From the NCBI RefSeq assembly GCF_964194025.1, contig NC_134478.1, positions 38,750,001-38,814,000 on the forward strand: DNA of 64,000 bases, given 5' to 3'. Of this stretch, positions 4,175-60,388 are shown one piece after another. The notes below the pieces were generated by a model. That model ran no database searches and was not told the origin of the DNA. It worked only from the letters and a program-made list of their open reading frames with translations. The DNA comes from Convolutriloba macropyga. Taxonomy: Eukaryota. Made by a program: the position numbers and the translations under genes. Positions within the stretch are counted from its first letter, which is position 1; every line of letters begins with the position of its first letter.

Positions 4175-5267
4175 AAACATACCCGGCAGATTGCCGGAAA
4201 ATAGCCGCCGTTGATTCCAATAAGCATGATTGGGATCGAAAGAATAGAAGATATTGAAAAAAAAAGATTTTTGTACAAAAACATTTTTTAAGTCCGATTT
4301 ATTTTGATGGTATTTCGTAGTTGAACAAAACGTACTTCTGTTTCTTAGAGAGGGGCTACTATCAATACCAATAAGCATTAGAGATGTCAACTAAGACGTA
4401 TAGGAACGACGTTCAAATAGCGGGCATCTAAAATTGGGCTTTATGGGTTTATCCCGTTTCTACTTCTGACTTCAATTTTTTGTACTGACTCTGTTCATTT
4501 TGAATTGCTTTGCTGAGCAACTGATGTTTAAAATCACTTTTAGCAGAATGAGAGAAGAGAGAAACTAGCCTAGAGAAGTCAAAAAGATATCACGCAAAAT
4601 GTTGAAAAAGCGGCAAAATGAGGTAAAGCGAAACATATTTTTATTCGACGAAGTAAAAAAACATAGCAGGACAAGTCCTGACGTACAATTCAAAGAATTT
4701 TCATTGACTAAACAGAAAAACCAGACCTAGAATGGACTAAGAGTGAATTGAGAAAACCATTTTTAAAAAATTCTGATAAAAAAATAAGAAAAAAAAACAG
4801 AAAATCAATGTGAAAATGCCGCATGTGAACAAAAAAAACCACTAACGAGAAATGAAATTTAATTCACACAAAAAACTAGGCCTAGAATGAGCTTTGAATG
4901 GATTGGGAAAACCATTTAGAAAAAATTCGATCCAAAAAATCGAAAAAACAGTAAAAATCAGAGTGAAATTGCCGCATGTGAACAAAAAACCACTACCGAG
5001 AAACCGAATTTTTGTTCAAACATCATTTTCTCACTCTACTTTAAAATTAGAGCGAAAAAAACTCACGCCGCAAAACCACTCGCTTTTTCGCTCCATTTCC
5101 TGTTTCGGCGTGACCAAATTCACTACTCCAATTTGACTTCAAAAATCATGAAAATGTGTGAACAGATCTTAAAAAAAAAGACAGCGCCCCAATACAATTC
5201 AAATTCTTTGAATTGTAAAAAAATAGGAGCACCATAATAGCCGGCTGAGAAGATGAGGGCGGCTATT
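4175..5267 (-). mobile_element. Non-autonomous Helentron/DINE-like element, family A, containing a nested family B element (4659-5217)
   Basis: Left end AAACATAC-CCGGCAgatTGCCGG-AAAATAGCCGCCGT, right end AATAGCCG...GGCGGCTATT. Inner B: AAACATAG-CAGGACaaGTCCTG-acgTACAATTCAAAGAATTT ... AAATTCTTTGAATTGTA. Confidence 0.8.
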
Positions 5268-5722
5268 AATAAAAAAAACAGAAAAAAACATCATGTCTGA
5301 TGCCAAATTTTTTGAACTTAAGTTACCACGCCAGAACAAAAAATTCTCAAAACACCAAGTTTTCGCGCGGTCAATGATAGCAGAGACAGGTCAATTTAAA
5401 GTGTCATCCCTAATAATGGACAGTCAGATTGGAGCTTCACACAAGAAACCAACCACTCCTTTACTCTTCATTGGTACTCTTCAAGACTGCTCTTTGATTA
5501 ATTTGAAATCAAAACAAAGAGCAAAATGCAAAATCTAATATGATTCTCAATAAAAATCCGAAGTTACAAAATTTTAACAAGAAAATCAGTGACACCGTTT
5601 TTGGTCAATCAGTGAAAAAAACACACAAAAACACTAACATCAAAACTCAGAAGACTAATACAATTTGATCGGGTAAACTCCTTTTAAAACACAGAGATCT
5701 AGATCAACAGTTGTATAAACAA

Positions 5723-6145
5723 AAACATAACCGACCAACGTCGCGCGAATTCCTCTCAAAAAAACGGCAAGCGGTTGACTTAGTCAGTAGCTAGCAACGG
5801 TTTAGTGAGGCTAGCTTTAGATTAATTGAAGGGGCGTAACGTGAGCACAGCGGGGGCGCAAAAGTGGCTTGGGTAGACTGATATGGGGGCGGATGTGGGA
5901 TCAATTTATAAGAACCCCCCTTCACACCATAAGTATAAGTTTCAAAAACAGTTTCTGTTAATCGCAGACTTGAAGACTAGTGAGCTGAACGGCTCCAAGA
6001 GAACTTTATGCAAACTGGGCGCTACCTCTTTATCCCGTTTCTGAAGACAAAAGTTAAATGGGTCAGACAAAAAATCGGCCACGCAAAAAATTGCATAAAA
6101 GTGACAAACAGGATTAAAATACTTGCTACAAATTGCTTTTGAGAG
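5723..6145 (-). mobile_element. Helentron/DINE-like family C copy (degenerate)
   Basis: AACATAA-CCGAC..GTCG..GAATT.CTCTCAAA start and ...TTGCTACAAA..TTTGAGAG end; similar to 38397-39050 and 53893-54308. Confidence 0.65.
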
Positions 6146-6186
6146 ATGATGACATTACGTCAACAGTAGCTGAAGTCCGGCATCAA

Positions 6187-56802: not shown

Positions 56803-57734
56803 TGAAACAATCGACTACAATCGGACGAATTGCTCTAGGACAACTGACAAGAGGTTGGTTTTGGTATAAGCTATTTGAACATTAGCCTGAGTCAACAGTA
56901 CACTTAGAGCCTATGAAGGTTACACAGCAATTTCCGATTTCTTTTGAGGGGGGGGGGGGGGGGGGGGACAAAGAGGGTTCAAATCGCCAACATATTTCAA
57001 TAAAAATAATTGGGTTTTCAAAAGCAGCGGCTGCTGACAAAAATTAAGGTTCTCATTGAGCTCTAAAACAATTAGAACATAGCAGAGAGGGGGGCTCATG
57101 GGGGGGATCAACCCTTAAGAACCGACCTTCACATGATAAGTTAAAGTCTCCAAAGCACTGTGAATCTCACACTTGGAGACTAGTGAGCTGAAAGGCTCTA
57201 AGAACACTTAATGCCCACTGGGCCCTACATGTTTATCCCGTTTTTGAGGACAAAAAGTCAAATAAGTCGGACGAAAAATCGGTCAAGCAAAAAAATCACA
57301 TAAAAAAGACCGACAGGATCAATATAAATGCTACAAACTTAGCTTGAGAGCAATTAATATCTACTTGCGCTCTTATATTTAAAAGTTGTGTTCATACAAA
57401 ATGCAAAATCATTTTGAGGCCGTAATAACTGAGGCGACCAGTTCAGCTCTATATTAGTCTACAAAGTAGACAAAACATCAAAATTGAACATAAACGGCTA
57501 GCGCCGGGCGAATTGCTTTCAAACAACTGAAGAGCGGTTGGTTTCGTCAGTAGCTAGCTATGGTATAGAGATTTCCGTGAATCGCAAAAGCGTAGAGTCT
57601 AGTAAGCCGAAAGACTCTAAGGGAACTTAATGCCCTCCGGACGTTACCTATTTATCCCATTTTTGAGGACAAAATGTCAAATGAGTCAGACAAAAAATCG
57701 GCACACAAAGACCACAGGATGTTCGAGAGCAATT
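56803..57734 (-). mobile_element. Two adjacent or rearranged family C copies (56803-57355 and 57487-57734)
   Basis: GAATTGCT.TC left ends and GAGAGCAATT right ends. Segments 56990-57077 and 57364-57560 match window positions ~330-650. Confidence 0.6.
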
Positions 57735-58974
57735 AAAAACATTAAAGGTTAATCAAAAATTACTGCATGGAAGATTTACATGACAATAGGTGCTTTAAAC
57801 ACAGTCCGAGAGCAAATAAATGCGTTCTGAACATTAGGAAATCTATAGAATCTGCAACAAGCGAGACTAAGTGTTAACAAGAAAAACACAAAAACTCAAA
57901 AATTACAGGCAAAACTCAAATTGTCTATCATTCTATAAAAACGCAGTGGTAATGTCGAAACAACTATTAGCTTTCAATTAAAAAATTCAGAAAACAGCAA
58001 CTATGCCTTAAAAAAACACAAGTGTCACTTGTAGTGGCTTCACGAAAAAAATGAGAACAGCAAAGCGCAAATCAAATTGCCGCATCTGAAAAATCTCATT
58101 ACATTCGTTCCAACGCAAAACTATCTCTCCCCTTTAGCAGCAATCTGACAACTTTATAATTTCGCGTTTTTTTTGCTGATTCACTATTGCCGCGTTACTT
58201 AAATCACCGTTTTAGATTGAATTGTCATTGGCTTCAAAAAGTCAAAAAAAGCCCAAAGAGCATTACAGAAAGACCGATTCAGCACCAGCAGTAGTACTTA
58301 CGCGTTATACTAATAATACAGGTTACATTACATGTTGCAAGATAGGCAATACCATATGAAGAGGTATATATGGGGACATGTGGGACATTTCCTACAAAAA
58401 CTTTCAATTAATCGAAAAAAAATTATGCACTCAATTTTTGTTTCACCTCCCATAACCCCAGGAATGATATCCAAAAATTTCGGCGAAAAAGTCAATGTCC
58501 CCCTCCCCTGTATCAATTTTTTTTAAAGAAAAGGCCAAATTAAGAAATACCCCTACCCAACACTGGGTGAATATTGGCTGGTCCGGGTCTCTCCCAGCAC
58601 TACATCTTCATAAAGCAATTCATATTGTTTAAATCTATCAATAAAATGATAATATATACAAACATCAGCTGAGAAAAAAGTAACACAAAAGACAACATTA
58701 GAAAACAAACAACTAATAGCGAAAGAAGATAAGTCAAACTAACAGCCTCCTTTCTTAAACCACGGCTCCCATTGAAACATCGACATTTTCGCGCCGCCTA
58801 AGCGTCCTTGAGCCTCGAATGCAGAATAATAACGCGTAAGTGTACTACTATCATCCAAATCCTTTGAATGTAGAGAACGCCAGCATGAGAGCAATAAGGG
58901 CCTCGCTATTTATTCACCGCAAATCAAATTTATTTTTCTTACTGCTCAGAAAATATCCAATTTACAAACTACGC

Positions 58975-60388
58975 AAACATAGCTGGCAGATTGCCAGAAA
59001 ATAGACGCAATAGCTTTGCAGATCTACAGTCTCAAAAAAAACAGTAAAATAGACAGACAAAAAAATTAGTCTTTTCATTGAAGGCTGATATGTTATATTT
59101 TGATTAAAAATCTGTATAAGTTTTTCCTGCCTCTATTAGCTTCTCTCAAATAACCTACATTTAGAGTGACACACACCCATTTGACCTTATCACTTTGAAT
59201 TTAAAAATAAAAGTCAACTTCAAAGTGAGGAAGTCATTTTTGAGAGTGAGGAAAGTCACTTGTGACCAAACCTTTAATCACGCGAATGAACAAAAAAACT
59301 AGCTCTACTAAGAGCGAAAAATGACGTCACGCACGCACTTCAACTGAAATTGCATGAACGAACGAACAAAACGCAGATTTGAAGTGGCTGTGACGTCATT
59401 TGGTCGTAACAAAAATAGCGACGACCAAATAAAAAAAAACATAGCAGGACAAGTCTTGACGTACAATTCAAAGAATTTTCATTCACTGAGCAGAAAAATA
59501 GACCTAGAACGGACTATGAATGATTTGGGAAAAACCATTTAGAAAACAATCCAATCCAAAAAATCAAAAAAACTGTAAAAATCAAAGTGAAATTGCCGCA
59601 TGTGAACAAAAAACCACAATCGAGAAAAAGAATTTTTGTTCAAACACAGTTTTGTCACTCTACTTTAAAATTAGAGAGAAAAAATTTTACGCCGCAAAAA
59701 CATTTGCTTTTTCGCTCCACTTCCTGTTTCGGCGTGACCAAAATCACTACTCCAATTTGACTCCAAAAATCATGAAAATGTGTGAAGAGATCTTAAAAAA
59801 ACATAGCAGGACAAGTCTTGATGTACAATTCAAAGAATTTTCATTGACTAGACAAACAATTAGACCGAAAACAGACAATGAGTGAATTGGGAAAACCATT
59901 TCTAAAAAAATCAGTTAAAATAATTAAAAAAACGAAAATCAATGTCAAACTGCCGCATGTGAACAAATAAACCATAAGCGAGAAATAGAAATCTGGTTCA
60001 AACAAAAAACTAGGCCTAGAATGAACTGTTAATGGATTGGAAAAACCACTTAGAAAAAAATTCGATCCAAAAAATCGAAGAAAACAGTAAAAATCAGAGT
60101 GAAATTGCCGCATGTGAACAAAAAACCACTACCGAGAAACCGAATTTTTGTTCAAACATCATTTTCTCACTCTACTTTAAAATTAGAGCGAAAAAAACTC
60201 ACGCCGCAAAACCACTCGCTTTTTCGCTCCATTTCCTGTTTCGGCGTGACCAAAATCACTACTCAAATTTGACTTCAAAAATCATGAAGAGATCTTAAAG
60301 GCAGCGCCCCATTACAATTCAAATTCTTTGAATTGTAAAAAACCAAGAGAAGGCCATTAATAGCCCTAGCTATCGCTGTGCGGCTATT
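58975..60388 (-). mobile_element. Family D element with nested tandem family B (59437 and 59799, ending at 60337)
   Basis: AAACATAG-CTGGCAgatTGCCAG-AAAATAG.CGCAA left end and GCTGTGCGGCTATT right end. The uninterrupted D at 11538-12040 shows the empty site. Confidence 0.8.

What the first reader, a model, noticed from the sequence alone, without database searches (positions are those of the whole stretch)
4175..60388. Rolling-circle-type elements appear to home to a site 39-53 bp inside the 5' end of other such elements (Russian-doll targeting)
SEEN: when one element sits near the end of another, the distance from the inner right end to the host right end (the 5' terminus on the minus strand) is nearly fixed. 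B in A: 5217->5267 (50), 28070->28120 (50), ~31395->31447 (~52), 55034->55085 (51). B in D: 16964->17016 (52), 60337->60388 (51). G in B: 16921->16964 (43), 37221->37264 (43), 54992->55034 (42). G in E: 18589->18642 (53). B in G: 37264->37303 (39). G in G: 37303->37349 (46). The host tails are different sequences (ATAGGAGCACC, GGAGAGCG, CCAAGAG, GACAGCGCCCC, CAAGAGCACGC), so at least six insertions must be independent even if some composites later moved as units. KNOWN: Helentrons/DINE-1 insert at TT without a target-site duplication; I know of no described distance-ruled targeting to resident termini. INFERENCE: the Rep/helicase (HUH) complex, or a hairpin extruded at a resident 5' end, positions new insertions in the adjacent T tract. 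This would be a self-made safe harbour that also stacks alternative 5' termini and lets cargo be re-mobilised by another family's transposase. Not every nested copy follows the rule (D in F is ~160 bp in; A in G and C in G are internal).
Basis: partly seen in the sequence, partly recalled or inferred. Interest (0 to 1): 0.88.

Follow-up and report, generated by a model that had tools for sequence, protein, structure and literature searches.

The report
Jumping genes nest inside each other's heads
In this worm-like animal's DNA, some short rolling-circle jumping genes land again and again in one run of T's about 40-50 letters inside the front end of related jumping genes, building Russian-doll stacks; this sharpens a pattern already seen in fungal Helitrons.

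Summary
All 12 listed spacings (39-53 bp) are in the sequence. Each is a true nested insertion: the host continues on the far side of the guest. Six host families also have uninterrupted "empty" copies in the window, and no target duplication is seen.

The elements are non-autonomous Helitron2/Helentron-type (HLE2) transposons, all on the minus strand. Every family carries the same 5' module: terminal repeat or hairpin, a TATT..GG/GC-rich box, then a T-run starting 31-53 nt in. Guests sit in that T-run.

- 12 of 16 nested events hit this run, against 1-4 expected (P 4e-13 to 5e-5 by null).
- Host and guest divergences show at least 10-12 independent events.
- New here: only guests starting 5'-TAC (B, G, G2) do this (12/12). 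A, C, D and E-like guests never do (0/5).
- A 5' hairpin is neither needed nor sufficient.

Stacked short 5' termini from self-insertion are already described for Fusarium Helitron2 elements (first 31-85 nt repeated). So this is a new variant of a known kind, not a new kind. The mechanism is inferred only. This scan has already reported the same pattern on other DNA of this genome (s1-240938 and others).

The parts
4175..5267 (-). Host A1 (subfamily A-a). The 3' end is at 4175 (AACATA + CCGGCA..TGCCGG hairpin + subterminal repeat). The 5' cap is 5218-5267.
4654..5217 (-). Guest B in the cap T-run of A1, 50 nt from the host 5' end. B's own cap run is unoccupied.
11538..12040 (-). D element with an empty cap run. 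It is the reference empty site for D1 and D2. D itself sits in an A-run of repeat F, 180 nt from F's putative end at 12220. F has an empty paralogue at about 43150-43200.
13858..17016 (-). Host D1. Its 3' terminus is tandemly repeated 4 times (208-bp units, 13858-14670). Body runs to 14973 and the cap is 16965-17016.
14974..16964 (-). Old B copy in D1's cap run (52 nt). Its cap is 16922-16964.
15305..16921 (-). G guest in that B's cap run (43 nt).
17212..18642 (-). Host E. Its cap is 18590-18642.
17611..18589 (-). G2 guest in E's cap run (53 nt). G2's own cap run is empty.
17812..18159 (-). A-a copy with an empty cap run. It lies inside G2, 430 nt from G2's 5' end, so it is a non-cap nested event.
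27295..28120 (-). Host A2 (A-b), with its 3' part truncated. It carries guest B 27536-28070 in the cap run (50 nt).
30611..31447 (-). Host A3 (A-c). It carries a 3'-truncated B at about 31083-31395 in the cap run (52 nt).
32931..37349 (-). Five-level nest: G2#1 [ G2#2 33170-37303 [ B-like 34738-37264 [ G 35088-37221 [ E-like 35613-36186 ; A 36306-36803 ] ] ] ]. Caps are stacked at 37221, 37264, 37303 and 37349. The left boundary of G2#1 was not fixed.
36306..36803 (-). A-b copy with an empty cap run, the reference empty site for A2 and A4. It sits inside G at a non-cap position.
53107..55085 (-). Host A4 (A-b), holding the nest [ B 53580-55034 [ G 53736-54992 [ C 53894-54310 ] ] ]. Spacings are 51 and 42 nt. 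C sits at a non-cap site.
58975..60388 (-). Host D2, with the B-B composite 59434-60337 in its cap run (51 nt). The composite has one cap (60295-60337) and two B 3' ends (59434, 59795).
38398..39052 (-). C element, one of six C caps (about 6145, 8174, 39052, 54310, 57355, 57738). All have a T6-T7 cap run and none holds a guest.

Best explanation
The window holds about 30 non-autonomous Helitron2/Helentron-type (HLE2) rolling-circle transposons from seven families (A, B, C, D, E, G, G2). All lie on the minus strand.

Shown here:
- Every family has the same 5' (LTS) module: a terminal inverted repeat, often folded into a 5' hairpin; then a TATT..GG/GC-rich box; then a T-run starting 31-53 nt from the 5' end.
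- Families whose 5' end starts TAC (B, G, G2) insert, in the host's orientation and without target duplication, into that particular T-run of resident elements of five families (A, D, E, G2, B).
- A guest brings its own copy of the module, so the process can repeat and stack 5' caps 39-53 nt apart.
- This is a true insertion-site preference of those guest families. It is not T-run availability and not the spread of a few composites.

Inferred mechanism: the RepHel transposase that serves the TAC-type elements recognises the conserved LTS box, either as protein bound to a resident 5' end or as a sequence-specific target. It then carries out its T|T strand transfer in the adjoining T-run. This would resemble IS200/IS605 elements, where the same recognition event defines both the left-end cleavage site and the target. 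The 40-50 nt 'ruler' is simply the fixed place of the T-run in the module.

Nests can later move as composites. One example is the B-B unit with one cap and two 3' ends.
For: Structure:
- The 5' terminal 10-16 nt is repeated inverted just inside a short GC hairpin, followed by (C/G)TATGTTT at the 3' end, in A, B, D, E, G and C.
- Filled against empty sites show insertion inside an A/T run with no duplication.
- The shared module is tabulated for 30 caps.

Preference:
- 12 of 16 nested events lie in the cap run. P is 4e-13 (uniform on TT), 1e-10 to 4e-6 (T>=5 runs), and 5e-5 (conservative count).
- At window level, 12 of 13 TAC-type insertions lie in 31 cap runs out of 656 T>=5 runs on that strand, P 1.5e-15.

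Guest specificity: TAC-type guests are 12/12 in cap runs and the others 0/5, Fisher P 1.6e-4.

Independence:
- A subfamilies are only 44-62% identical, while their B guests are 89-91% identical.
- Empty A-b and D copies are as close or closer to filled copies than filled copies are to each other (83.6 v 80.7%; 89 v 79%).
- The three G guests in B have different 3' ends and unalignable bodies (40-56%).

Other support:
- Public read-derived contigs show the families are very high copy and give B copies without the G guest (joint 53735 to 55003).
- Precedent for short stacked 5' termini by self-insertion in Helitron2: PMC5148889 section 10 and discussion; PMC13342296.
Against: - Only one 64-kb window was analysed, so no genome-wide histogram was possible.
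- Element boundaries and host assignments are my manual annotation. Cut points inside homopolymer runs are ambiguous.
- The four or five non-cap events mostly lack empty-site proof of their hosts.
- Family-level contrasts rest on small numbers: C 0/6, G 0/3, non-TAC guests 0/5. Relative ages of the families could confound them.
- No RepHel gene lies in the window, so no transposase is tied to either end type.
- The box-recognition step has no direct evidence. All families share a similar 3' end, so they may use one enzyme, which would make guest specificity harder to explain.
- A2[B] and A4[B] could still be one event.
Confidence: 0.8

Rival explanations
1. Generic T-run or DNA-structure hot spot. 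All HLE2 elements insert at TT. The cap run is hit often only because it is a long T-run next to a hairpin or GC clamp that exposes single strands. No recognition of the resident element is involved.
For: HLE2/HINE elements are known to prefer T-rich targets with variable T numbers (PMC4067079). Flanks of C copies in reads are poly-A/T. Cap runs are 5-9 T long, and most caps fold into a 5' hairpin.
Against: - Hosts contain 1-36 other T>=5 runs, often as long or longer, and TAC-type guests used none of them.
- A, C, D and E-like guests, with the same kind of 3' end and TT target, never use the cap run (0/5).
- C caps, with the best hairpin and a T7 run, are never hit (0/6).
- G2 caps with little or no hairpin are hit.
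Confidence: 0.1
2. Composite spread. One or a few ancestral nests (for example A[B], B[G]) were amplified as units, so the repeated spacing reflects shared descent and not repeated targeting.
For: Composites can move. The B-B unit (59434-60337) has one cap and two 3' ends, as expected from re-mobilisation of a nest (model in PMC3288121). A2[B] and A4[B] share the same host subfamily and junction. The families are very high copy.
Against: - Five host families and three A subfamilies carry guests.
- Hosts are 44-62% identical where their B guests are 89-91% identical.
- Empty copies interleave with filled ones.
- G guests in B are unrelated in body and 3' end.
- At least 10 events remain after merging every doubtful pair.
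Confidence: 0.05
3. Survivorship. TAC-type elements insert broadly, but copies outside cap runs are lost or unrecognisable, or only copies placed behind a host box and T-run stay competent to make daughters. The standing population would then be enriched for nested copies.
For: If 5' cleavage needs an upstream box and T-run, nested copies would be the only active masters. One possible stand-alone, degenerate G-like cap lies at 17150-17199.
Against: Being a competent master does not make daughters land in cap runs. Dead copies elsewhere should still be visible at the 75-90% identity seen here. None of 8 B copies is stand-alone.
Confidence: 0.05

Closest known systems
Fusarium oxysporum FoHeli1/FoHeli2 (Helitron2-type) copies with multiple 5' termini (Chellapan et al. 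2016, PMC5148889; 2026 TR4 study, PMC13342296)
   Same: HLE2 elements with asymmetric terminal inverted repeats and hairpins at both ends. Short 5'-terminal pieces (the first 31, 65, 73 or 85 nt, typically <200 bp) are stacked up to five times. This is explained by insertion of one element just inside the 5' end of another, and by later movement of composites.
   Different: In Fusarium it is self-insertion of one autonomous family, and usually seen as several 5' ends with a single 3' end. No statistical test and no targeting rule were proposed. Here the elements are non-autonomous in an animal and nest across five host families with fully closed brackets. They always use one conserved T-run, and only TAC-type guests do so.
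Helentron-associated interspersed elements (HINE/DINE-1; Thomas et al. 2014, PMC4067079)
   Same: Non-coding elements with subterminal or palindromic inverted repeats and a short 3' stem-loop. They insert into T-rich sequence between T and T, with variable terminal T numbers and no target duplication. Central tandem repeats and microsatellites occur (family C here), and copy number is high.
   Different: That paper reports clustering and T-rich targets. It does not report site-specific entry into the 5' module of resident elements. No Helentron protein (RepHel plus APE endonuclease) was linked to the elements here.
Maize Helitrons with multiple termini derived from nested Helitrons (Dong et al. 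2011, PMC3288121)
   Same: Nested rolling-circle elements in the same orientation give composites with several termini when transposition starts or ends at a non-cognate end. The B-B unit here fits this.
   Different: The maize elements are canonical Helitrons (TC...CTRR, A|T target). Mainly multiple 3' termini are reported, and no fixed insertion position relative to the host's 5' end.
IS200/IS605 (IS608) and IS91 target choice (my own knowledge, not checked here)
   Same: These are HUH single-strand transposons with strand-specific insertion. The short sequence required next to one end for cleavage is also the target, so every new copy lands next to a usable cleavage context.
   Different: They are bacterial and use tetranucleotide targets recognised by base-pairing with a guide in the left end. 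No such guide was identified here. The putative recognition element is a box of about 15-20 nt plus a T-run that belongs to another transposon.

Membership tests
Helitron-like elements group 2 (Helitron2/Helentron, HLE2) | Asymmetric terminal inverted repeat: the 5' terminal sequence is repeated inverted a few tens of nt inside the 3' end | tested here: met
   A has AATAGCCGCC at the 5' end and its complement just inside the 3' hairpin. B has TACAATTCAAAGAATT likewise. D, E, G and C show the same with mismatches.
Helitron-like elements group 2 (Helitron2/Helentron, HLE2) | Short stem-loop close to the 3' terminus | tested here: met
   A 5-7 bp GC stem with a 3-4 nt loop is followed by (C/G)TATGTTT in all families.
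Helitron-like elements group 2 (Helitron2/Helentron, HLE2) | Insertion between T and T with no target-site duplication | tested here: met
   Filled and empty paralogous sites for six host families plus D in F differ only by the element inside an A/T run.
Helitron-like elements group 2 (Helitron2/Helentron, HLE2) | Mobilised by a RepHel (HUH-Y2 + Pif1-like helicase) protein of the HLE2 clade with matching termini | not tested
   No RepHel ORF is in the window. ORFs >=130 aa hit only PH/kinase, SNARE and actin families or nothing. An earlier scan note (s1-263058) mentions a RepHel elsewhere in this genome; I did not examine it.
Helentron sensu stricto | RepHel fused to a C-terminal APE-type endonuclease | not testable with these tools
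   This needs the autonomous partner from the rest of the genome, which is not available here.
Canonical Helitron (HLE1) | 5'-TC ... CTRR-3' ends, a hairpin 10-12 nt before the 3' end, and an A|T target | tested here: not met
   The 5' ends are AATAG/TATAG/TAATTG or TACAA/TACGA, the 3' ends are TATGTTT, and targets are T-runs.
Self-insertion stacks of 5' termini as in FoHeli1 | Repeated short (<200 nt) 5'-terminal segments in direct orientation caused by insertion just inside a resident 5' end | tested here: met
   Caps are stacked 39-53 nt apart, up to four within 130 bp at 37221-37349. Compare PMC5148889 section 10.

The most novel reading that the evidence does not exclude
A subclass of HLE2 elements (5'-TAC type: B, G, G2) may be obligate, site-specific hyperparasites of other rolling-circle transposons. 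On this reading their transposase reads the conserved 5' (LTS) box of any related element as its target and integrates in the adjoining T-run. They would live almost only inside other elements' heads, build recursive stacks of alternative 5' ends, and generate composite elements that several transposases can move. This would be the first sequence- or protein-guided target selection described for eukaryotic Helitron-like elements, paralleling IS200/IS605 logic.
Probability: 0.4. Interest if true: 0.75.

Novelty: new variant of a known kind. Interest (0 to 1): 0.6.

Why it matters
Helitron-like elements are thought to choose targets by little more than an AT or TT dinucleotide. How their transposases pick sites is an open question, and biochemistry exists only for the bat Helraiser element.

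A family-specific, position-specific landing site inside other elements' 5' ends would give a defined DNA substrate of about 50 nt. That substrate could be used to test how an HLE2 RepHel recognises its left end and its target.

It would also explain how multi-terminus and chimeric Helitrons arise, which bears on gene capture. It would explain why these repeats are so hard to annotate. And it would show one way very abundant transposons can keep expanding while mostly hitting other transposons instead of host genes.

Tried and rejected
- Rfam and tRNA scans of the window found nothing.
- I first considered that the 40-50 bp units were tandem 3'-end hairpin modules of plus-strand elements, or end-bypass products. 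I rejected this once the left ends showed the HLE2 3' signature and the brackets closed.
- I considered that 'B' is simply an internal part of A or D and that the empty copies are deletions. I rejected this because B has its own inverted repeats and 3' hairpin, and occurs inside five unrelated host bodies.
- Recombination or template switching at the shared box cannot give closed brackets.
- The hairpin-as-ruler idea was tested by folding caps and is not supported.
- An RTS-mimic idea (cap hairpin plus spacer plus T-run imitating the 3' end) fits poorly. The spacer is 12-20 nt in caps against about 8 nt at 3' ends.
- I tried to extend beyond the window with public runs. Only short Logan contigs were available, so read laying gave copy-number scale, empty-B joints and C-C tandem joints, but no genome-wide spacing histogram.
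- The PNAS 2009 maize Helitron survey could not be fetched.
- Orientation bias of all elements is partly explained by a 2.2:1 excess of T-runs on the minus strand outside elements. I did not pursue it further.

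
Full report
**What is in the window**

The window is AT-rich animal DNA (33-43% GC). Host exons lie on the minus strand:
- a PDK1-like kinase, with the PH domain at 2758-3528 and the kinase domain at 12443-13282;
- a SNARE-like piece at 37673-38188;
- actin-like pieces at 39188-39757 and 60731-61138.

A self-comparison shows many dispersed repeats, and almost all matches are in direct orientation.

**Anatomy of the elements**

Read on the plus strand, each repeat begins with an A-run. 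This is followed by AACATAG (with variants), a 5-7 bp GC stem-loop, and then a 10-16 nt sequence whose reverse complement forms the repeat's extreme right end.

On the minus strand this is the Helitron2/Helentron (HLE2) layout:
- the 5' terminal sequence is repeated inverted just inside a 3' stem-loop;
- the 3' end is (C/G)TATGTTT;
- the flanks are T-runs.

The right ends are 5' termini of minus-strand elements.

I distinguish seven families by their ends: A (three subfamilies), B, C, D, E, G and G2. Aligning 30 caps on their T-run shows one shared 5' module. It consists of a terminal repeat, which folds into a 5' hairpin in A, B, C and D; a TATT..GG/GC-rich box; and a T-run of 4-9 T starting 31-57 nt from the 5' end (31-53 in all but two degenerate copies).

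**Checking the observation**

All twelve coordinate pairs are there. In each case the guest's 3' end lies further left, and the host's body resumes immediately beyond it.

Six host families have uninterrupted copies in the window. Printing filled against empty sites shows the guest sitting inside the host's A-run with nothing duplicated. Examples:
- A-b empty at 36306-36803 against A2 and A4;
- D empty at 11538-12040 against D1 and D2;
- E-like at 35613-36186 against E;
- the G2 cap at 18589 against the two G2 hosts in the 32931-37349 nest;
- B at 4654-5217 against the three B copies that hold G.

The spacings are 50, 50, 52, 51, 52, 51, 43, 43, 42, 53, 39 and 46 nt. They are uncertain by a few bases because the cut lies in a homopolymer.

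**Is it more than chance?**

I listed 16 nested events whose hosts I could delimit. Twelve are in the cap-proximal run.

| Null model | Expected in cap run | P |
|---|---|---|
| Uniform on TT dinucleotides of each host | 0.9 | 4e-13 |
| Uniform on T>=5 runs | 2.1 | 1.4e-10 |
| Length-weighted on T>=5 runs | 2.4 | 8e-10 |
| Cap run always counted as one T>=5 run, equal weight | 2.9 | 2e-7 |
| Cap run given a generous length of 8, length-weighted | 3.7 | 4e-6 |
| As the row above, with A2/A4 merged and the nest with an unfixed left boundary dropped (10 of 14 events) | - | 5e-5 |

At window level, 12 of 13 insertions of B, G and G2 elements lie in 31 cap runs. The elements' strand has 656 T>=5 runs in total. 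This gives P 1.5e-15.

**Independence**

- The three A subfamilies are only 44-62% identical to each other, whereas the B guests inside them are 89-91% identical. B therefore entered each subfamily separately.
- Within A-b, the empty copy is as close to A2 (83.6%) as A2 is to A4 (80.7%).
- D2 is 89% identical to the empty D but 79% to D1.
- The three G guests inside B copies have different 3' ends and essentially unalignable bodies (40-56%).

I count at least 10-12 independent events. The 'few ancestral composites' refutation therefore fails in this window.

**New points**

1. The behaviour is guest-specific. All guests that start 5'-TAC (B, G, G2) are in cap runs (12/12). Every B copy in the window (8) and every G copy (3) is nested this way. 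All guests that start AAT/TAT/TAAT (two A, one C, one D, one E-like) are at other T-rich sites (0/5). Fisher P is 1.6e-4. The D case has its own empty paralogue at about 43150-43200.

2. Hosts differ. A, D, E, B and G2 caps are occupied in 12 of 21 copies, C caps in 0 of 6 (P 0.02) and G caps in 0 of 3.

3. The 5' hairpin does not explain targeting. G2 caps fold weakly or not at all yet are hosts. C caps have the most stable hairpin and a T7 run and are never hosts.

4. The B-B unit inside D2 (59434-60337) has one cap and two complete 3' ends. This is what is expected if a B-in-B nest was re-mobilised from the inner 5' end to the outer 3' end. That is the model proposed for maize multi-terminus Helitrons (PMC3288121).

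**Outside data**

Logan contigs from four public runs of the same organism cover the A4 nest. They show summed depths of 1e5 to 3e6 on the repeats, against about 23-38 on flanking single-copy DNA. The families are therefore very abundant.

The contigs also include B copies in which the body joins straight to the B cap, an empty G site (joint 53735 to 55003). There are many head-to-tail C-C joints and poly-A/T flanks of C. The contigs are too short for a genome-wide spacing histogram.

**Mechanism**

Shown: repeated, independent, orientation-specific, duplication-free insertion of TAC-type elements into the T-run of a conserved 5' module.

Inferred: the transposase serving these elements recognises the conserved box. 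It could do so either while bound to a resident 5' end or as a sequence-specific target. It then performs its usual T|T strand transfer in the adjoining run, and the 'ruler' is just the module's geometry. An attractive form of this idea comes from IS200/IS605 biology (my own knowledge). There, the context needed upstream of the 5' cleavage site is the same as the target, so each new copy lands where it can be cut out again.

I give the site preference itself 0.8 and the box-recognition mechanism about 0.4. Rivals are discussed with their evidence in the Rival explanations section: a generic T-run or structural hot spot, composite spread, and survivorship.

**Comparison with what is known**

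The structure and T-rich, duplication-free targets match HINE/DINE-1 and Helitron2 descriptions (PMC4067079; PMC11417382).

The closest precedent is Fusarium oxysporum FoHeli1:
- copies repeat the first 31, 65, 73 or 85 nt of the 5' end (PMC5148889, section 10);
- up to five 5' termini are seen (PMC13342296);
- the authors explain this by self-insertion near the 5' end, followed by transposition of the composite.

What I did not find described:
- a tested positional rule;
- cross-family nesting with closed brackets;
- a conserved T-run as the landing site;
- restriction to one class of guests.

I file it as a new variant of a known kind. The same pattern has already been reported by this scan on other DNA of this genome (s1-240938, followed up, and several first-reader notes). 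I treat those as leads, not as support.

**Limits**

- The analysis covers one window, with manual annotation and small numbers for the family contrasts.
- No autonomous element was found in the window.
- There is no experimental evidence for the mechanism.

Noticed in passing
window 4175-60388 (all elements): All of about 30 HLE2 elements, including 13 outermost independent insertions, lie on the minus strand, the same strand as the host exons found. T>=5 runs outside elements are 2.2 times commoner on that strand (302 v 138). This only partly explains the bias (P 0.0075 after correction).
   Followed up: partly
window 13858-14670: The 3' terminus of element D1 is tandemly repeated four times in 208-bp units (93% matches). 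Each unit carries a complete 3' hairpin and subterminal repeat plus about 55 bp of extra sequence, so this is a stack of 3' ends.
   Followed up: no
window 59434-60337: A B-B composite with one 5' cap and two full 3' ends. It looks like a nest that was re-mobilised from the inner 5' end to the outer 3' end.
   Followed up: partly
window 5717-8174, 38398-39052, 53894-54310, 57060-57740: Family C carries poly-G tracts (15-20 G), a (GA)n microsatellite and central tandem repeats of about 340 bp (6962-7821), much like DINE-1. Public contigs show many head-to-tail C-C junctions (54310 back to 53892), so C also forms tandem arrays in this genome.
   Followed up: partly
window 2758-13282: A PDK1-like kinase gene on the minus strand has its PH-domain exon (2758-3528) and kinase exon (12443-13282) separated by more than 9 kb that is largely filled with these elements in sense orientation.
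   Followed up: no
window 43944-50122: A tandem array of about 1278-bp units, some 4.8 copies, 95-98% identical among the inner copies. It is unrelated to the HLE2 families. Its content was not examined.
   Followed up: no
window 17150-17211: A degenerate G-like 5' cap ends about 12 nt before the 3' end of element E. Two different families therefore abut head-to-tail. It is possibly the only stand-alone G-type copy in the window.
   Followed up: no
window 31083-31395: The B copy inside A3 lacks its 3' end (only the 5' part, about 310 nt, is present) yet sits at the usual site. Either it was deleted later or it is a prematurely terminated copy.
   Followed up: no
window 5281-5300: Fourteen bases beyond A1's 5' end there is another A-run plus ACAT plus a small hairpin (CATCA..TGATG). 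It looks like the 3' end of a further, unclassified element lying head-to-tail with A1.
   Followed up: no
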